The position numbers and the translations under genes were made by a program. Of a stretch of DNA of 64,000 nt, positions 5,390 to 64,000 are shown piece by piece. The notes beneath the pieces are model-generated. The model was not told where the DNA came from and ran no database searches. It saw only the letters and a program-made list of their open reading frames with translations. Positions within the stretch are counted from its first letter, which is position 1. Each line of letters begins with the position of its first letter. Source of the DNA: Diadema antillarum (lineage: Eukaryota); the NCBI RefSeq assembly GCF_040938485.1, contig NW_027271395.1:124001-188000 (forward strand), read 5' to 3'.

Positions 5390-6789
5390 CTATATACCGC
5401 ATGGAACTTTGGAGAGGAGTGATACTAGTATTGAAGATGTGTTCCTGTGGGTAATAACATTATGATTGTCATGGCGGTGTAGGACACTATTACTAACAAT
5501 GTCTCCCACCGTTTTCTCCTGAATCGCCTGCAATAGTTTCCCTTATTGTGCAATATGAAGGGTCAATTTAGGGTGCATGTGAGCGAAACGTCCATTTGCG
5601 CAGGTCAGAAAACATGTCGTTTCTGCATTGAAAAATACAAAACGAAGGGTAAAATTAATGATGTTATTTCTTACATTTTTTAAATATAACTTGTGCCCCT
5701 TCGGTTCTCTCACTGACTATTTAAAATAGTATGTGTGTGACGTTTTAAGCAGATATAGTGCGTGATTGTATAGTTGCTAGTTTCGTTTACTGACCGTGGT
5801 AAAAACTAAAACTCTGCAGGGGTTTAGGATGGTTTGTATAATACTTCTTATAGAGTATAGGACCTATATGTCGGCGTAGGCCTATACACTTGGCCTATCA
5901 ATCGTTCATTCCTGCAACTTCGCACTTGGTTAGGCCTATATTTCTGGCACATCATGTTGTATTCTAGTAATTGTTATCATCGGCAAAAATTATGTTTACA
6001 TAATAGACTACAGTAATTTTTCGACCTTGTGGTCGCATATCGTGTCAAAATGAGAGAAGAAAGGGCAAAATGCATGCAGAATCGTCCACCTGCGGTTCTG
6101 TAATACGTAACGGAGTAACGATGATAAAATTGAAAAGAATAATCAGCGAGCAATGTACTGTATGTTTTGTGAAGGGGACAATACGAGAAGGGATCGGAAG
6201 GACCTGTCAAACTAGAGAGCTATAAAATCATAGCAGTTCCCACCTCCATGTTTACAGCTATATTTCTTTGGTGCCTAAGTCTTCGAAGTAAAAGTAATCA
6301 GGAACATCAATTTTTGTTCCTACTCGTGATGTGGTATTTTGACATTACGCTTGGTCTATTTATAGTAACAGACCACAGCTGACAACCGACCCTGTGTTGT
6401 ACTAGTAGTAGTGCACTTCATCGGGGATGTCCACATCTATGACGCAATCGTGGGAATCGCAATCACATGCAATAACAATATCCTTCCGCATGTGTCGCAC
6501 ATAGAAAATAAACTTTCTCACTAAAACAATATCCGTCAAAATTTAAGTCATGTCATCCCATCTGATTAAACTAGAGCGCAGTTGCACATAACAAGTGCTG
6601 CTTTAAAACTTTGAGAGATATTGAATGCAGTAAATTCATAGTGTTAACCCATTTTCACACCAGTGTGAAAAAACTGAGGGCAGTAACATAAAGCGGAGTA
6701 ATTCGGTCGCCATTTTATCAACAAAGTGGATGTGCACGCAGATAAGTGTCCGACACAGTGATCTGACTCTTAGTTCACAAATTTGATAA

Positions 6790-27479: not shown

Positions 27480-28380
27480 AAACCAGAACCCAAATACAAG
27501 TATAAATTGAATAATGTGACTTGAGTGAAAGCAGCAATCATTAGAAGAACACAATATCAGTGAAAGTTTGAGGAAAATTGGACAATCGATTAAAAAATGC
27601 TTTTTTTCCCTTTTTTTTTTTAAGTTTCGGCACCGGCGTCACTGGATAAGAAGACTTCATAGTACAGTATGTCCCAGAAAAAAATTACAACGGCACCCTC
27701 CGCACCAATAAGTTTAAAAATAGATAATCAATCCAAATATACTTTCAGGGTGTGAAACTTATTACCCACGTTTTACAGAAAACCCCATTCGATTTGCTTC
27801 AGCGGTCGAAAAGAAATTACAGGATTTTTGTAGAGCATGTCAGGAATCGGTTCCCTCCAAGTTCTGTCCATTGTGTTCACACATGAATATGCAGTTCCAA
27901 GAGCATGGAAGTGCTAAACTGGGAAGAATCAGACTCACGGACCTGCTTTAATTGTAACAATCCACATTTCACCACTGTGAACACTTAACAAAACTAAATG
28001 GAGTTTTCTGCAAAACAACGCTAAAATGTTTTATTTCAAGACCCTGAAACAGCATGCAGACAGTTTAATCATATAAGAAGTTATCAATGCAAAAATCCGG
28101 TTGTATTTTTTTGACAGTACTGTATACTGTTCATGTCTTGTTTTGTTCATGTAATGATAATATTATTGGCAAAATGTTCATCCACGAACTACACGCCAAT
28201 AGGCCTAAATCGAAACGGCAACTGCACTCGTTATTATGTGGACAATAATGTAAAGAAAATATACAGAGAATTCCACAAAAATTTAATGTTTCATTTCATC
28301 GAATTGTTACTGACATAAATTGGGGTAATGGCATTCCCCTGCTTCTCGAAAGAGGAAAGTCAAGTGCTCTTTCATTAGGC
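27480..28380. mobile_element. Kolobok-like repeat fragment interrupted by a Tc1-like MITE (27665-28122)
   Basis: Pieces ~27480-27662 and ~28240-28380 match the reverse complement of ~40430-40790; the insert has TA flanks and TIR-like ends CAGTATGTCCCAGAAAAAAATTACAAC / CAGTACTGTCAAAAAAATACAAC. Confidence 0.65.
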
Positions 28381-29262
28381 TATACATTATTATCATAATG
28401 ATAACCAGACGATCAGTGTCACTGAGAACGGACCTTAGTTGAAGCGGTTAATAAGGAAGTCAAATCTTCACCTTTTTTTTTTCCACGGAACACTGATAAT
28501 CGGACTGACTACATTATGCAAATTAGGTTGAGGACTTTGATGTTGTTATGGTCTTGCACGACATACCCCTCAATCTCTAATACACAAGTCTTCGAATATT
28601 TCCATTTTCAACATGAAATGTAAGGAAAAACTGACGTATCAGTTTTGCGTTGCGTTGCACAAACCTATCATATTATGATGGCATCTTCTTTCTTCATTTT
28701 CTTTTTTTTTTTTGAGGGGCCAGGTCACATTTTGGCCTTTATAATAATTTGCATTATTTTCAGCAAGTCAGTTCATCAACTCACGAGTGCATAATGTGCA
28801 ATTTGATGGTGAAGGTGAATTTGGCGAACGTCCAGGTCTACAAAACCTGTTGGATAAGTCAGCATAAGCATTTGCTTTAATAAACAAACATATCGATAAT
28901 CTATCGCTGTGATTATGAGGCTTAAACAATGAAACAGGTAATCATATATCAATTATAATGATAAGTTGTGATAACTTGTTATTGTTAGAATAATTATATT
29001 TTATTCGAACAATAAGGCTTGCGAGCTTGCGAGTGCAAAGTTCTTTCCTTTCTATCTATGATCATATTCTAATATTAATGTTTGTTCTTCGCTATCGGTT
29101 GCGTTAATCTTTGACCACCTCTTACTGTTTGCAACGTAAGCAAACAGATTCGAGATGGGCACTGCATGTAGATAAAAACAATTCCGCAATCATCGATAAC
29201 GAGCCTCTGAAATAAGTTGTAGGCCTGTTCCGCAGAAGTCGACAGAGCAGAAAGCAGCAACA

Positions 29263-29931
29263 ATGAATTCGTTCTATGTTGTATCGACGGTGATCGTCTT
29301 GTGTCTGGTTTCCGACGTTTACGGAGCCCCTCATGAGCGACGACAGGCCGAATCTGCGTCAATTCCAGCAGCGGTAGCCGGAAAAGTGTCGCAGCAGAAC
29401 ATGATGGGCGACGCTCGCGAAATCACGCCTGCTGAAGAGGACTACTACACAGTCCTAGGTGGACAACATGTGCAACAGATTGATTTGGATGACGACGTCG
29501 ACATGCACGAGCCGGTGTATCAACCAAAGGTTGTCCCGCCGCAGAAAAATTCACAGATGACCCGGGATGAGGAAAAAATCGATGTCGGCATATCATTGGC
29601 AGACATGGCGAGGCTGGCCGAAGTGTATTATGGGGAAGCTGACGTTGTTGACGTCGACAACATCGAGATAGGAGTCGACTTTCTGAGGAGCATGGAGCTC
29701 GACGACAGCCTGATGCATCCCGGAGGGGCACGGCGACCCCTGTACGGACTGAAGGCGCCTTCGACCCGTCGTCGGCAGGAGATGAGTAGAGATCAGATGC
29801 ACCCGTGTTTGAGCTGCGGACAGCGAAGTGTCTCCGTTCCCGCCAAACCTTCGGCAGACGAGGTCAACCAGGAACTCGACCCGGCTCTGCTGAGGAAGTA
29901 CGATGACGATGACGCCTTCATCCATGCGTAA
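29263..29931 (+). CDS. Orphan secreted acidic protein / candidate peptide precursor, 222 aa, single coding exon
   Basis: Longest clean ORF in the region, GC-rich against AT-rich flanks, AACA-ATG context, hydrophobic N-terminus MNSFYVVSTVIVLCLVSDVYG-AP resembling a signal peptide, Asp/Glu-rich body, basic sites RR, RR, RRR and RK. No family recognised. Confidence 0.8.
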   Translation: MNSFYVVSTVIVLCLVSDVYGAPHERRQAESASIPAAVAGKVSQQNMMGDAREITPAEEDYYTVLGGQHVQQIDLDDDVDMHEPVYQPKVVPPQKNSQMTRDEEKIDVGISLADMARLAEVYYGEADVVDVDNIEIGVDFLRSMELDDSLMHPGGARRPLYGLKAPSTRRRQEMSRDQMHPCLSCGQRSVSVPAKPSADEVNQELDPALLRKYDDDDAFIHA

Positions 29932-30830
29932 GCCGACATCGTGTCAGTACCAAAGAAGTCCTGCTTCAAGCCGTCGGGGGAAATGATTCATCGAGACGAA
30001 ATGCATCCACGACCCCACTCCTAATCATCTCACCAGTCGTATTTGTCATCGCCGATTGAAATCAGAGCATCGGAAGTAAAGTTTTATGGCTATTATTGAA
30101 CCATAATTGACCAACAGTCACCATGCAAAGTCACAAGATGAGAAAGTATACATACAGCAAGCCTTATTTTCTATACTTTCAGTAAGATTACGATTACTGG
30201 TTTGACTATTTTCATTATGATATAATATTGTCAAAAATAGTAATAGATAGATCTCCTTCATAAGTTTTGTGATGGAAGGTTATCAATTTTATTTTCAGAA
30301 AGGCAGATCTTTCAGTCTAGATGATTTCCCTATTTCATTTTATAATCATTTCAGGGTGTTTTTTTTTTTCAGAAGGCGGGATGGACATAGTGGTTCTCCA
30401 GCACAAAAGAAAAGAAAAGAAAAAAAAAATGTTTCTCTTGCGGAAGGTTCTGCAAATTTCATTCATTGAATTCAATTTCATTTTCATTCTCTTTATCCTG
30501 CGTTTTAGGCTGGAAAACGAAATATCCTGGCATAGTGACCACATTAAATCCGTTTATCGGGAGTGATTTTCCAACGTGGTTCCAACATTGTACTATTGAA
30601 CTGCGTCAATTTTGTAATGCTCTTATTATAATATAGATAATAATAGACAGTTACTCACAAATATCAGAAAGTGAAGAATACGAACTAAGAAATTTTCCAA
30701 AGAGCTTCCGTACATTATTTTGCATTTCTTTCACCTCGCGTTTGTTCTGTTTCTGTTTTCTTTGATGATCATTCAATCTATAACATTCCCAAAACACATA
30801 CACACACAAATTAAAAAACAAGCAAAAAAA

Positions 30831-30862
<32 letters not shown>

Positions 30863-31865
30863 AAGAACTCGAAGGACATAACCAATTTAAGAGAATCTGA
30901 CCGTGTTCGATCCTCTTGTTTTTCACATCACCGTCACAATTTTACATTACCGTCTGAAAGTGTCTGTTATTGATGACATATTTGACATCCACATACCGGT
31001 AGTTCATTTCCTGAATAAATCAGACTACATGTATGTGGTGATTTCTCATTTGTATACTGTATGTTTAGCTATTTACCTAATTGATTTGGTTATGAACATG
31101 AATAACTCTAGAAGTATTCATGGTTAAGAATATCCTATATTGATTACGATGCATACTTATCCATAAATAGGTATTATTACGCAATGAATCACAGTGGATA
31201 TAGGAACGCAGTGATTTAAAAACATGCCCGTGACATGATAAGCAATATCTCAAGTGTAAAGTTACGCCGTTATATACCGTCATCGTTGCGTGAAAAACAA
31301 GGCTCTTAATTTTAATGGAACACCAAATCATGCATAAAAATTCTGAACAACAATGATCACTGCATGAGGGGTAGGCCTATTAGATTTCGATAAGGCGTGC
31401 CCTCTAAATCGTTTTCATTATTCGTATACCCCACTATATCTTGAATTGGCCACATTTTTATTTTTCGTTGACACAACAATTATGATTATGTTTCTTGGTT
31501 ACCTCTCCTTATATCATTGTTGCATGCTACAAGGGAAAACGATTTGCGCTATATTCAGATGATAAAAAAGTCAATGTATGTTTTATAATTCAAATCTGTA
31601 TACTAATTAGTTTGTAAAATCTTTACCCTAAGAATCTAAACATTAATATACATTGTCATGTACTTAGCTTGTGGGCCTCGCGCTAACGGAGCTTGCTAAA
31701 TCACTCTCTACACGGTGCCCTGTCTCTCGCAATGGTCATTGAAATCTATATAGTTTCGAATTACGCGAGCTATCTTTTTTTTTCACGAAGATTCAAGCAA
31801 TCAGAAGCCATCATTCCAAACTAGATTCATTGGTCCTCATACAATCGCCTGAGGCATAATAAATT

Positions 31866-32219
31866 GAGTTACAGTTCGTTATTCCGAAGGTTCGTTAATC
31901 TGAAAGTTCTTTAGTCCGAAGGTTTGTTATTCCGAAGGTTCATTAATCCGAAAATGAAATAAGGGTCGAAATTCCGAAGGTTCGTTAATCCGAAAATGAC
32001 ACAAAGCTCGTTATTCCGAAGGTTCGTTACGGACCCTATTTCATTTCGGATCAACGAACCTTAGGAATAACGCCACAAATGTTGAGATGAACGAACCCTT
32101 TTTTCATTTTCGGATTAACGAACCTCATAGGTATATGGAATTTGCGAGTTTCAGATTAACGAACCTTCGGTATAACGAACCTTCGGAATAGCGAACCTTC
32201 GGAATAACGAACAGCACCC
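31866..32219. mobile_element. Foldback-type MITE built of ~15-bp TTATTCCGAAGGTTCG units
   Basis: Left arm carries tandem TT(A/T)TCCGAAGGTTCG units, right arm their reverse complements; 21-bp match 31874-31894 / 32192-32212. Confidence 0.85.
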
Positions 32220-33331
32220 AATAGATATATTGTGGTATTAATGAGCGAAAACATTCATTTGAAGTTTTTCTCCCTAGATCAGTGGTTAGTTGTTCTATCG
32301 CTTGGACTATTCACCATATTCTATCAAAGTCTTAAAAAAAACAAAATACAAACTTGTAAAACGTGAATTGAACCAATGAACTTCCAACAACAGTGGGAAT
32401 TAATTCCGTATATGAATTTGACCGAGTACAAAACACATGCAATGCAAACTATTGTACATTCCTTCAAAGTTCTTCTACTGCTGTACTCGAAAATGTTCTC
32501 TTTCTCATCGTGCCGAGTATTAAAACTGCAGTTTATTTGCACATGTATCTCGTTGTTTGCTCTATATCAGGTCAGCTTACATATTTTTTTTTCTTCTTTA
32601 CTACTGGACATACATGTTGATACACGAAGTATAATGTCATTTGCCCGCGCACATAAAAATGCACTCACACTCACATGTATATGATATGTATATATGTATA
32701 ATACGTATGTGTATATGTATATATATGTATATGTTTATGTATATGTATACATAATATAATTACATCTATACATGTATATACATCGTATATAATTTGTTAC
32801 TCCCATTCATAGTACATATACATGACTCAAAACAAAGAGAACACTGTCCATCCAGTATATCAACACACAGCGAGGAGTTGGATATCCCAAGAATGCATCG
32901 GTAATAAATGTTCACTGATTTTTTTTTCTTCAACTGAATGACCTGATATTGCTTAAACAAGATTATTAATGTATCAATCCATGTTCTATTCAAGAACACC
33001 GTGTTCTACCATATCTAGACTTAGTGGTGAATGTATGTTACGTGGACTGACAAAAATGTGACAGCTAGGTCACATTATGGTATACAAGCACACCTTATGT
33101 GACCATCTGTCTATACATTCAATTTCTCTCTTGCCACAAAAAGCATGTTTCTGTCTCCCGCTTGGGGTTTTTGTCAACAGGTTTGATTTTATAGAATAAA
33201 ATGAACAATACATACACAGACACAGATGATGCATATATACATTTGGGTGTGTCTAGTATACTGTATTATAAACTAGGTATAAATATGTTATACATAATGT
33301 ACATAATGTATAACTTATAACATAATACACA

Positions 33332-61010: not shown

Positions 61011-64000
61011 CACCCCCCCCCCCCCCAAGATGAAATCCTAGCTACGCCGGTGCCCTTTCCCCGCTTGGTTTCCCTCAAAAAAAAAAAGTCTGGGGATTGA
61101 GAGCTTCCTATATTCCAAATGTCTGTCCAAAAAATCGCGCTACATTTAGTGTCAAAACGCACCCCCCTTGAAAAAAAGCTGGTGACGCCCCTGGGAGTGC
61201 AGGGCAGATCGTTTTTGGATCAGCTACATCATCCCTTACATCCTGCATTTGATGAGTTCAAGTACAGCCCGTGGTGCAGGGAGCACAAGACACTTGACCG
61301 GAAAACATCCTCCATTCTCTGCACACCATCCATTCTCTTCGATAGGGGGAAGCACTGGGCAGTTTGTCTTGTATGATTTATCTCGCATCGTGATGTAATT
61401 GGCACGGAGAATGTGAGGTAGTAATGTGGCGCGAGTTGGAGGTAACATCTCAGCTTCCAGGTTCTTTGATCGGAGCAGTTCCCATCTGAGCGCTGGCAGG
61501 GTTGTTGGGCCTGATGAACAGTAATTACGACAAATGAAATGCTCTAGTGCCATCACCTGTGTTCGAAGCTCTCCGTTGCTAAGTTCAGTTGGAATGAAAC
61601 CTTCGCCCAGTTCTTTGAAACAGGTGATGGCAGGATCATTGATCCATGTCTTCTTGAATATCCCAACGAACTTTCCTCCCCAGTCGGCACCAGAAAAATT
61701 ATGAAGTCCAAGGAGGCCTTGGCATTGTTGATTTCCAATGACTTGAACCCGCTCCAGCACATCTATTTCTCGTTTCTTTGTTCCCCTGCCTGTAGAAAAT
61801 AGTAAGGAAGTGGGCACTGCATTGTTTCCACAAGATGCTGGATGAATTAAGAGAAGGAGGACATCAGTGTCAGGTGACCAGACAGTAATTTCTCGCAAGG
61901 CCCCACTAGCAGTAGAGGCAAGGACTTGATTGGGGATCAGAGTATCAGCCTCTTCATGTGTGTGTGCCTCCTCAAAATCATGTCCCTTGATGAAGGTATC
62001 ATACACAACCACCAGCTTGAAAGGGTTATCAATGTTCTGTGAGAAGTAATCAAGCAGCCCCTGGCCTAACAGGCATGTCAGCTTATAGTTGATGAAGATA
62101 GGAGCTCATTGATGGACATTGTGAGTTTCATTTCTGGGTGTATCTCGTATTGTACAAATGTAGTTGCCCTCTTTTGTCGTGTCTTGCTCTTTAATGACTC
62201 CTCCGTATATCGATCAAACACAACTCGACCTTCATCATAGCTAGCCATCATCCTTTCGATGCGCCTGTTGAACTCATCCTGTAGGTCTGACATCTTATGC
62301 ATGGCAGGTGTCATCTTCATGCCTTGAAGTACACCCATGGCGTCAATTATCAGCACCTTGACAGGAAGGCCACGTAAGAGGTTGGGATGTTGGGCTACTG
62401 CAGAAGGATCCTGCGTTATTTCATGTTCTACGGTAAACATAACCTCTTCCTGCATCATTTCAACCTGTGGGTTGGTTGGATGATTGTCCTCCACGTCGTC
62501 ACTCCGTTTCACAGAATCGGAAGGTGCTGCCTTTGCATCTTCAACTGCATGCATCAGACTTGCTTTGTCTGCTGGGATGTACAAAGTACCATCGACAGCA
62601 CATAGTGAATGGGGAACCACTGACATTTCATTTTCACCTATTGTCTCCGCAAGTTTAGGAACTAAGCTTGGGCGGTTGGCCTGAATGATTAGAAATCTTC
62701 CCAGCAATTCACGTTCCTCTCTCAACTTGATGACCTTATCTCCAACACGCACTTTCCTTTTCTCCATCCAGTTTGAAAACGATTTCAGCTTCAGTTTCTT
62801 CATTTTGTCCCACACTGAGAGGGTTGATGAGGAAAGCAAACGATCAGACACAAACTCCTCAAAGCGCTTCTGGCCCTTTTCTGCAAAGCGAAGAATGTCA
62901 CTTTTGGCCTCACAAGACACAACTGCTGATGAAACCAGACTCTTCAATTGTGTCTTCTCCTTGAAGGATTGTCTCCGCAATGCAGCTCGATTAGGTGGCG
63001 TAGATTCAGAACATTTTTCTTTGACCTCAACGCAATGTCTCCTGAGAGCTGATAATGTTCCTTCCTCCCTGAGGCTCCGGTAGCTTTGGGGAAATCGTTG
63101 AGATCACTATCCACCAGAGCAGCAAGGTAAGGTGTGATAGTGACTAGTCGGTCCAAAGCGGCTTTATTTCTTGTGAGTCCAACCATCCCACCATGCCCCT
63201 TTAGTTTCTTGATTTCTTGCTCTAAAGCCTGATCAGTGAAGAGATTACAAAACGCTATCTCTGACTTTGCCACCACAAAGTCTTCAGACTTGAGGGCATT
63301 CTATGTTTCTGGATCATCCTCTTCTAGGGCATTCATTTGAGGGAGATGAACTGGCATCAGACGGCATAGTTCAGGAGATCACGAGCGAAAAAGTACTTGG
63401 TGAGATCTTCTAGTGATGACAAGTAACCTTCCCAGTGCCCTGATCGAGAGGAACTAATGAAGTGTAGAAGACTCTCCACCTCGTGAAGATACTGGGTCAA
63501 GAACTGGGCAAACTCGCCTAGGTCTTCAGATTCTTCAAGCTGTTTGACATTGCTCGAGTACCAGGATTGAATTTCTTCGAAGATCTCCACCACCTGTGGG
63601 TCACGTTCATGAAGTCTCTCTTTGAGATTATTGCACTGGATGCGAACTGGGCCTTTGGGAAGATCCGATAGTATGGCATCAAAACGCAACATCATGATTG
63701 CAAGGCTTGCAGTGATGTGAAATTCAAGGCCACGCTTGTAAGTTTTACCGCCAAAGATCCGGCGAAGAGATGCTGTTCAAAGTGTATGCACCACATTCGA
63801 TAGCACATGTGTCAAGATGTGAGGGCCAACGACGGTCGCAGATATTCCCTGGGATAACCGGAGAACAGTATAGAGTGTCCATAATCAGTTGGTGATGTCT
63901 TGAATAATGAGGCAATCACCGCTGTGTTTGTAGGCGTGCTAGCGTGTGAAGATTGAGACAACAACAATGACCTAGTTGCAGCCCATGTTTGAAGAACATC

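What the first reader, a model, noticed from the sequence alone, without database searches (positions are those of the whole stretch)
29928..30024. Protein-like sequence continues in frame for 30 codons past the stop and repeats the protein's own motifs with synonymous changes
Seen: after TAA (29929-29931) the frame reads ADIVSVPKKSCFKPSGEMIHRDEMHPRPHS* (29932-30024). It echoes upstream VSVP, KPS and EMSRDQMHP. VSVP is GTC TCC GTT CCC upstream but GTG TCA GTA CCA downstream (all third positions differ, amino acids identical); KP is AAA CCT vs AAG CCG; E, D, H and P of the MHP motif also use different codons. Inference: the tail evolved under coding constraint. The stop also overlaps a strong donor (GC|GTAAGC at 29928). 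Options: a recent nonsense allele, programmed readthrough (TAA-G is not a classic leaky context), or a splice/stop switch producing alternative C-termini and a fourth MHP peptide.
Basis: partly seen in the sequence, partly recalled or inferred. Interest (0 to 1): 0.7.

Follow-up and report, generated by a model that had tools for sequence, protein, structure and literature searches.

The report
Extra stop codon before protein's last repeat
A sea-urchin gene for a secreted repeat protein carries one extra stop codon just before its last repeat, so the 30 codons after it are real former coding sequence, most likely cut off recently rather than read by a special mechanism.

Summary
ORF 29263-29931 (222 aa, signal peptide) ends in TAA, followed by 30 in-frame sense codons and a second TAA at 30022-30024.

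The gene is not an orphan. It belongs to an unnamed sea-urchin family that includes S. purpuratus LOC100891226. These proteins have a signal peptide, then alternating long units ending ..LDDSxMHP and ~26-residue short units ending MHP.

The tail is the collinear counterpart of the homologues' third short unit. A tblastn alignment runs straight through the stop (E 1.5e-7). In fixed register the tail beats at least 99.95% of stop-free windows from the same 64 kb. GC3 stays at the coding level through the tail and composition drops after 30024. Relative to the homologues, the TAA is an extra codon.

What the stop means today is not settled. No RNA run exists for this animal, and the DNA-run output did not show that codon. 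I favour a recent lineage- or allele-specific premature stop (about 0.5). UAA-G is a poor readthrough context, the homologues have no stop there, and no downstream RNA structure was found. The GTAAGC donor mimics the family's real exon-1 donor, but no downstream exons were found.

The scan had noted this ORF before, on this window only.

The parts
29171..29179 (+). TATA-like GATAAAAAC, about 90 nt upstream of the ATG; possible core promoter
   Evidence: Read. S. purpuratus has TATAAAAAC at a similar distance from its ATG. The DNA alignment of the two upstream regions is not convincing, so this is only a hint.
29263..29325 (+). Predicted signal peptide MNSFYVVSTVIVLCLVSDVYG
   Evidence: Hydrophobic core and small residues at -3/-1, by inspection. 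It aligns with the signal peptide of the homologues, MEFMKITRLAVFLCLFSAVLS. No signal-peptide predictor was available.
29263..29931 (+). Open reading frame of 222 codons plus TAA: a member of the sea-urchin MHP-repeat secreted protein family (long units 1-3, short units 1-2)
   Evidence: BLASTP to P0001 gives E 5e-12. The profile search finds S. purpuratus LOC100891226. tblastn of that protein hits 29452-30018 at E 1.5e-7.
29713..29721 (+). MHP codons of long unit 2 (ELDDSLMHP), the best-kept family motif
   Evidence: D147 D148 S149 M151 H152 P153 invariant in alignment A1.
29797..29805 (+). MHP codons of short unit 2 (QEMSRDQMHP)
   Evidence: It aligns with PEMDERVMHP of the homologues.
29902..29928 (+). 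Degenerate end of long unit 3 (YDDDDAFIHA, where the family has F-x-LDDSLMHP)
29929..29931 (+). In-frame TAA between long unit 3 and short unit 3; an extra codon relative to all homologues
   Evidence: Protein alignments from both sides leave a one-codon surplus in H-A-*-A-D versus H-P-V/A-D. The DNA alignment puts a 3-column gap of the homologues at GC[GTA]AG.
29928..29933 (+). GTAAGC, a donor-like hexamer in phase 2 overlapping the stop; use unknown
   Evidence: the only GTRAG in 29200-30100 apart from 30182. Base rate is 0.59 GTAAG per kb per strand, and 3% of TAA trinucleotides are G-TAA-G. The real exon-1 donors of S. purpuratus and L001 have the same form and phase.
29932..30021 (+). The tail: 30 sense codons. 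Short repeat unit 3 (26 residues ending MHP) plus RPHS
   Evidence: GC 0.54 and GC3 0.63 in this frame, against 0.62 in the ORF.
30001..30009 (+). MHP codons of the tail, at residues 24-26 after the previous unit, exactly as in the homologues
30022..30024 (+). Second TAA. Composition boundary and probable former end of the coding sequence
   Evidence: GC falls from 0.54 in the tail to 0.38 and then 0.29 downstream. No homology to the rest of the S. purpuratus protein in any frame downstream.

Best explanation
The gene at 29263-30024 is a Diadema-like sea urchin's member of an unnamed family of secreted repeat proteins that includes S. purpuratus LOC100891226. The family has a signal peptide, then alternating long units ending ..LDDSxMHP and ~26-residue short units ending MHP.

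The 30 codons after the TAA are the third short unit of that architecture. They were ordinary coding sequence for most of the gene's history.

In this lineage, or only in this allele, one extra codon appeared at the boundary between long unit 3 and short unit 3. It is TAA, and the most economical route is a 3-nt insertion splitting an Ala codon into GCG-TAA.

Ribosomes now stop there, because UAA followed by G is an efficient terminator. The product is a 222-residue protein lacking the last unit. The tail has become the first 90 nt of the 3' UTR and has not yet had time to lose its frame, motifs or codon-phase composition. That the stop also spells GTAAG is taken as coincidence.

Shown: the sequence, the family, the collinear homology of the tail, the extra codon, and the composition boundary at 30024.
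Inferred: that the stop is recent, that it is obeyed, and that the truncation is tolerated because the protein is modular.
For: - Family and architecture.
- The tblastn HSP of S. purpuratus P0003 runs through the stop to 30018 at E 1.5e-7.
- Fixed-register score of the tail against short unit 3 of three homologues: fraction of stop-free windows reaching it is 5e-4 or less.
- Tail identity to S. purpuratus in that HSP is 9 of 29 aligned positions, against 26% over the whole HSP.
- The homologues have no stop at this boundary, and a 3-nt gap lies exactly there.
- GC3 is 0.63 in the tail frame against 0.62 in the ORF, and GC drops only after 30024.
- There is no stable RNA structure after the stop (z +1.25) and no Rfam match.
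- No C-terminal-domain exons lie downstream to which a donor could splice.
- The gene evolves fast with weak constraint: 3 synonymous and 5 non-synonymous differences in codons 1-140 against DNA runs about 2-3% diverged. A tolerated truncation is therefore plausible.
Against: - Nothing dates the stop. No orthologue closer than about 30% identity was found, and the table of differences from the DNA runs was cut before position 29929.
- The tail is perfectly intact, with a perfect MHP, while the translated motif just before the stop is degenerate (IHA).
- Only 3% of TAA trinucleotides in the window sit in G-TAA-G.
- The family's true exon-1 donor has exactly this form and phase, so the donor reading is not negligible.
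- No RNA, ribosome or peptide data exist for this animal in the tools.
Confidence: 0.5

Rival explanations
1. Splice/stop switch. GC|GTAAGC at 29928 is a used phase-2 donor, as at the end of exon 1 in the S. purpuratus homologue. Spliced mRNA would add other exons. Unspliced mRNA would stop at the TAA inside the donor. The tail would be a recently intronised piece of the former exon.
For: - Exon 1 of S. purpuratus and of L001 ends TG|GTAAGA in phase 2 with an in-frame TAA. The intron is confirmed by the acceptor tacag|G and the annotated protein.
- The window has the same form and phase.
- G-TAA-G is rare among TAA trinucleotides, at 3%.
Against: - No match to the four small exons of the S. 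purpuratus C-terminal domain anywhere on the + strand downstream, at tblastn E up to 10, nor by tblastx. The one weak hit at 32871-32900 is chance.
- The exon side of the donor (TGC) matches no consensus position.
- Splicing would not translate the tail, so it does not explain the tail's conservation.
- It still needs the same recent mutation as the best explanation, plus a usable acceptor.
Confidence: 0.13
2. Programmed stop-codon readthrough. A fraction of ribosomes decode UAA at 29929 as a sense codon and make a 253-residue protein with the last MHP unit. The tail would then still be under coding selection.
For: - The tail is open and keeps the family motif, its spacing and its codon-phase GC3.
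- The motif after the stop is better kept than the one before it.
Against: - UAA followed by G is, by general knowledge of termination contexts, among the least leaky tetranucleotides. No CARYYA- or CUAG-type context is present.
- No stable structure lies downstream.
- The stop is not present in any homologue, so it is not an old conserved feature.
- An intact 90-nt stretch is also expected for a long time after a neutral loss.
Confidence: 0.08
3. The whole gene is a decaying copy. It lacks long unit 4, the linker and the C-terminal Cys-containing domain of the S. purpuratus protein. The TAA would be just the latest lesion in a gene no longer under selection.
For: - The window protein stops four codons after short unit 3, whereas the homologues continue for about 80 (exon-1-only ORF of L001) to 210 (full spliced S. 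purpuratus protein) more residues.
- dN/dS from 8 differences is about 0.5 and not distinguishable from 1.
- Some motifs are degenerate (KID, IHA).
Against: - A 222-codon ORF with an intact signal peptide, an ATG, a TATA-like element and no frameshift persists at about 30% identity to the homologues.
- Degenerate motifs also occur in the homologues (MHDP, GTYGP).
- The short form may simply be the ancestral or a tolerated architecture.
Confidence: 0.17
4. The TAA is an error of the reference assembly, and the real gene is a continuous 252- or 253-codon ORF.
For: The three bases are a surplus relative to the homologues, and no independent read of that codon could be inspected.
Against: - Contigs from three independent DNA runs (two samples) lie colinear over 28826-30139 with only small differences.
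- A clean 3-nt insertion outside a homopolymer is not a typical assembly error.
- However, the truncated table does not show the codon either way.
Confidence: 0.05

Closest known systems
S. purpuratus 'uncharacterized protein LOC100891226' (P0003) and its relatives P0001/P0004 (ENA contig) and L001 (Logan contig)
   Same: Signal peptide. Collinear series of long units (..F-x-R/Q-x-x-LDDSxMHP) and ~26-residue short units ending MHP. One large first exon. A G|GTAAG hexamer in phase 2 with an in-frame TAA at the end of the reading frame.
   Different: Only 26-33% identical. The window gene ends four codons after short unit 3. It has no long unit 4, no linker and no detectable exons for the C-terminal Cys-containing domain. 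It carries an extra TAA between long unit 3 and short unit 3.
Programmed stop-codon readthrough with conserved C-terminal extensions (many Drosophila and Anopheles genes, and a few mammalian genes such as AQP4, MDH1 and VEGFA; from general knowledge)
   Same: A protein-like, stop-free, in-frame extension follows the annotated stop.
   Different: The stop is UAA-G rather than a leaky UGA-C/UAG context. It is not conserved in relatives. No stimulatory structure is present, and no expression data exist.
Stop codon embedded in a 5' splice site, with intron retention or intronic polyadenylation giving a short protein form (principle known from the secreted/membrane immunoglobulin heavy chain switch; from general knowledge)
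   Same: GTAAG in phase 2 supplies TAA if the site is not spliced. In S. purpuratus an AATAAA follows within 15 nt of the donor.
   Different: In the window no AATAAA follows and no downstream exon is detectable. The sequence after the site is a former coding unit, not an ordinary intron.
Nonsense or truncating alleles in highly polymorphic species (ordinary premature stop near the 3' end)
   Same: A single extra stop sits in an otherwise intact frame, near the C-terminus of a fast-evolving modular protein. The downstream frame has not yet decayed.
   Different: The allele frequency and age are unknown. The event looks like a 3-nt insertion rather than a point substitution.

Membership tests
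Sea-urchin MHP-repeat secreted proteins (LOC100891226-like; unnamed) | Significant sequence similarity over most of the repeat region | tested here: met
   phmmer E 3e-4 across the whole library. BLASTP E 5e-12 pairwise. The profile search retrieves S. purpuratus P0003. tblastn gives E 1.5e-7.
Sea-urchin MHP-repeat secreted proteins (LOC100891226-like; unnamed) | N-terminal signal peptide followed by alternating long (..LDDSxMHP) and short (..MHP) units in the same order | tested here: met
   Alignments. MHP codons at 29713, 29797 and 30001. The signal peptide is judged by inspection only.
Sea-urchin MHP-repeat secreted proteins (LOC100891226-like; unnamed) | C-terminal Cys-containing domain encoded by four small downstream exons | tested here: not met
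   There are no collinear tblastn or tblastx matches in the 34 kb downstream. Short exons at low identity could escape detection, so absence is likely but not proven. L001's ORF also lacks the domain when read unspliced.
Sea-urchin MHP-repeat secreted proteins (LOC100891226-like; unnamed) | First exon ends in a phase-2 G|GTAAG donor carrying an in-frame TAA | tested here: inconclusive
   The same hexamer and phase occur at 29928, but at a non-homologous position (one unit earlier), and its use could not be tested.
Programmed stop-codon readthrough genes | Leaky stop context (UGA-C, UAG-CARYYA, UGA-CUAG) | tested here: not met
   The context is GCG UAA GCC GAC.
Programmed stop-codon readthrough genes | Stop codon conserved across species, with a protein-like extension under purifying selection | tested here: not met
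   All three homologues lack a stop at this boundary. Close relatives that could show selection after the stop were not available.
Programmed stop-codon readthrough genes | Stimulatory RNA structure just downstream (present in some cases) | tested here: not met
   MFE -17.6 kcal/mol against a shuffle mean of -21.6, z +1.25. No Rfam match.
Programmed stop-codon readthrough genes | Ribosome footprints or peptides beyond the stop | not testable with these tools
   No RNA run holds the stretch.
Alternative splicing / intron-retention stop switch | Junction reads from the donor to a downstream acceptor | not testable with these tools
   The three runs that hold the locus are genomic DNA contigs, colinear over 28826-30139.
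Neuropeptide precursor (repeated peptides released at flanking dibasic sites, often with C-terminal Gly for amidation) | Conserved mono/dibasic cleavage sites flanking each repeated peptide | tested here: not met
   KK/RR/KR pairs are present but not at conserved positions relative to the MHP motifs in the alignment of the window, L001 and P0001. There is no G-K/R after the motifs. No Pfam family matched.

The most novel reading that the evidence does not exclude
The UAA at 29929 is not a dead end but a regulated fork. Either it is read through at a useful rate despite its UAA-G context, or the stop-inside-a-donor arrangement is a family-wide device, also seen at the end of exon 1 in S. purpuratus together with an AATAAA 10 nt further on. 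Such a device would let one gene make a repeat-only protein or a longer one, and it would have been re-created here one unit upstream.
Probability: 0.15. Interest if true: 0.55.

Novelty: new member of a known kind. Interest (0 to 1): 0.3.

Why it matters
For annotation, the gene should be modelled as 29263-29931 with a note that 29932-30021 is a former coding unit. It should be linked to the S. purpuratus LOC100891226 family rather than called an orphan.

For biology, it is a clean example of how a modular secreted protein loses units from its 3' end. It also introduces an uncharacterised, apparently echinoid-restricted family with a very regular Asp-Asp-Ser-x-Met-His-Pro motif whose function nobody has tested.

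If the stop proved to be conserved and bypassed, it would be a rare case of UAA-G readthrough outside insects. The present evidence makes that unlikely.

Tried and rejected
- Pfam on the window protein and the homologues found no family.
- A word-index search with the window protein found nothing. An exact-protein look-up found nothing on record.
- RNA evidence: no RNA run holds the locus. The three runs found are genomic DNA, and their table of differences was cut at 29681, so the stop codon could not be read in them.
- The contigs' indel budget (6 letters in, 3 out) cannot be assigned to the stop, because the non-coding flanks alone explain it.
- Metagenome scans by protein and by a DNA pattern leaving the stop codon free were both empty.
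- The search for the S. purpuratus C-terminal domain or for synteny in the window found nothing. The hit at 32871-32900 is a chance match inside AT-rich sequence.
- The AlphaFold model of the S. purpuratus C-terminal domain had pLDDT 47, too poor for a fold search. The PDB sequence search found nothing.
- Promoter conservation is not convincing in the alignment.
- The literature holds no paper with the locus name, the motif strings or the run accessions, and nothing specific on readthrough in sea urchins.
- A neuropeptide-precursor reading was considered and rejected, because no conserved cleavage sites flank the motifs.
- A-to-I editing of UAA (needs two edits), a micro-intron (35 nt, too short) and reinitiation in the tail were considered and rejected as implausible.
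- Searching the scan's earlier findings by sequence gave nothing.

Full report
**What is in the sequence**

The + strand has an ORF at 29263-29931 of 222 codons. It starts with a hydrophobic, signal-peptide-like N-terminus (MNSFYVVSTVIVLCLVSDVYG). It ends ..KYDDDDAFIHA-TAA, with TAA at 29929-29931.

The same frame then reads ADIVSVPKKSCFKPSGEMIHRDEMHPRPHS (29932-30021) and a second TAA at 30022-30024.

The window is AT-rich animal DNA (GC 0.32-0.46 in 2-kb windows), with the ORF standing out as a GC-rich island. Earlier notes of this scan call the genome a Diadema-like sea urchin. I did not test that.

**Is the echo more than chance?**

On its own it is barely so. The best local alignment of the tail to the ORF is reached by 84 of 2000 shuffles, and 22% of all 30-codon windows in this 64 kb are stop-free. 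Different synonymous codons under identical amino acids are also what chance matches would give. They exclude a recent DNA duplication and nothing more. The decisive evidence comes from relatives.

**The gene is not an orphan**

Pfam and the word-index search found nothing. The full HMMER scan of 1.84 billion representatives found one relative, P0001 (E 3e-4; pairwise BLASTP E 5e-12). Iterating from it gave three more:
- P0002, on the Logan contig L001, whose complete ORF (L001:99-1139) encodes 346 residues with a signal peptide.
- S. purpuratus 'uncharacterized protein LOC100891226' (P0003, 435 aa).
- P0004, the N-terminal ORF next to P0001.

No paper mentions the locus or its motifs.

All members share one architecture: a signal peptide, then alternating long units ending in ..F-x-R/Q-x-x-LDDSxMHP and short units of about 26 residues ending in MHP. 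In S. purpuratus this whole part is one large exon. Four small exons then add a Cys-containing C-terminal domain.

**What the tail is**

The window protein is collinear with the homologues unit by unit:
- Long unit 1 ends DLDDDVDMHEP.
- Short unit 1 is degenerate.
- Long unit 2 ends ELDDSLMHP.
- Short unit 2 ends QEMSRDQMHP.
- Long unit 3 ends in a degenerate YDDDDAFIHA.
- The TAA follows, and then the tail.

The tail occupies exactly the place of short unit 3 (S. purpuratus VDGRVEWKKSSYYNGRDKTAGLRMHPKAAPH). It shares D at position 2, KKS at 8-10, an aromatic at 12, MHP at 24-26, and PH after a two-residue gap.

tblastn of the S. purpuratus protein against the window gives one HSP from 29452 to 30018. 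It runs straight through the stop (E 1.5e-7).

In this fixed register, with no choice of position, the tail scores +13, +16 and +24 against the three homologues. 33,287 stop-free 26-codon windows from the same 64 kb average -25 to -28 (sd 10). The fraction reaching the observed score is 5e-4, 2e-4 and 0.

The tail is as similar to S. purpuratus as the rest of the protein: 9 of 29 aligned positions, against 26% over the whole HSP.

Composition agrees. GC is 0.54 and GC3 0.63 in the tail's frame, against GC3 0.62 in the ORF. GC falls to 0.38 and then 0.29 only after 30024.

The tail is therefore a genuine coding unit of this family. The former end of the coding sequence is the second TAA.

**What the stop is**

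The homologues have no stop at this boundary. Aligning from the left (Y/F, D/E, DD, A/S, F/L, I/M, H) and from the right (A/V-D ...) leaves the window with one surplus codon in H-A-*-A-D against H-P-V-D. The DNA alignment places a 3-column gap of both homologues at GC[GTA]AG.

The most economical reading is a 3-nt insertion that turned one Ala codon into GCG-TAA. This is an inference. At this divergence the indel cannot be placed to the base.

*(a) Recent truncating mutation.* This fits all of the above, and it needs no special mechanism. By general knowledge UAA followed by a purine terminates efficiently. An unselected 90-nt stretch would keep its frame for a long time, roughly until about 0.1 substitutions per site, so an intact tail does not demand ongoing translation.

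The gene is fast-evolving and weakly constrained. Genomic contigs from two other samples, about 2-3% diverged, differ from codons 1-140 at 3 synonymous and 5 non-synonymous sites. The window protein already lacks everything that follows short unit 3 in S. purpuratus, so loss of units from the 3' end has happened before, or the other lineage gained them.

*(b) Readthrough.* The context is not leaky and the stop is not conserved. The 112 nt from the stop fold worse than shuffles (z +1.25), and Rfam has nothing.

The true exon-1 donor of S. purpuratus and of L001 is TG|GTAAGA in phase 2 with an in-frame TAA. It is confirmed by the acceptor tacag|G and the annotated protein. The window's GC|GTAAGC has the same form and phase, and only 3% of TAA trinucleotides in the window are G-TAA-G.

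Against it:
- The site is one repeat unit away from the homologous position.
- Its exon side matches no consensus base.
- No exon of the C-terminal domain and no synteny can be found in the 34 kb downstream (the hit at 32871-32900 is chance).
- Splicing there would discard the tail, not express it.

**What could not be done**

No RNA run holds the locus. The three runs that do are genomic DNA, with even depth over intergenic DNA and huge depth on flanking repeats. One 1317-nt contig in each lies colinear over 28826-30139.

The table of differences was cut at 29681, so I do not know whether these individuals carry the TAA. The contigs have 6 letters more and 3 fewer than the window somewhere in that span, but the non-coding flanks alone account for that many.

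The exact-protein look-up and two metagenome scans were empty.

**Verdict**

The present-day meaning is most probably an ordinary, evolutionarily recent premature stop (0.5). The alternatives are a decaying gene (0.17), use of the donor (0.13), readthrough (0.08) and an assembly error (0.05).

The useful by-products are a corrected identity for the gene, which is not an orphan, and a first description of the MHP-repeat family. The stop was bridged only with X, in one script alignment.

Noticed in passing
L002:5675-6000 (S. purpuratus AAGJ06000815.1): The S. purpuratus assembly has a tandem duplicate of the N-terminal unit (..EEAVMHPKKIY..DDSxMHD). A 1-nt frame difference between the copies makes the ORF that starts with the signal peptide stop at 5998-6000. 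The annotated protein therefore starts at the Met at 6001 and has no signal peptide. L001, a close relative, has one copy and an intact 346-codon ORF.
   Followed up: partly
L002:6913-6935 and L001:1134-1186: The exon-1 donor TG|GTAAGAATAATAAAC carries an in-frame TAA, two further TAA and an AATAAA within 15 nt. Contig L001 starts 98 nt before the ATG and ends 38 nt after that AATAAA. It looks like an unspliced short mRNA polyadenylated inside the intron, but the library type of SRR28370571 is unknown.
   Followed up: partly
ENA contig of P0004/P0001 (ERZ26222911, no DNA served): The two ORFs of the same gene overlap by 56 nt in different frames. That assembly therefore also has a frame break inside exon 1, between the first short unit and long unit 2. 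Three of four known family members show some disruption of exon 1.
   Followed up: no
window 27600-28387 and 31737-32327: Both flanks of the gene hold very high-copy repeats. Summed contig depth is 10^4-10^5 in the DNA runs, against about 20-60 for unique sequence.
   Followed up: no
window 61236-63695, minus strand: A run of long ORFs (258, 300, 110 and 112 aa) looks like one broken transposon-type gene.
   Followed up: no
window 32700-32800: A TA/TG-rich microsatellite-like stretch (gtatatgtatatatatgtatatg...).
   Followed up: no
P0003:306-435 (S. purpuratus exons 2-5): The C-terminal Cys-containing domain has no Pfam or PDB sequence match. The single-sequence AlphaFold model is poor (pLDDT 47), with one helix and five strands. 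Its fold remains unknown.
   Followed up: partly
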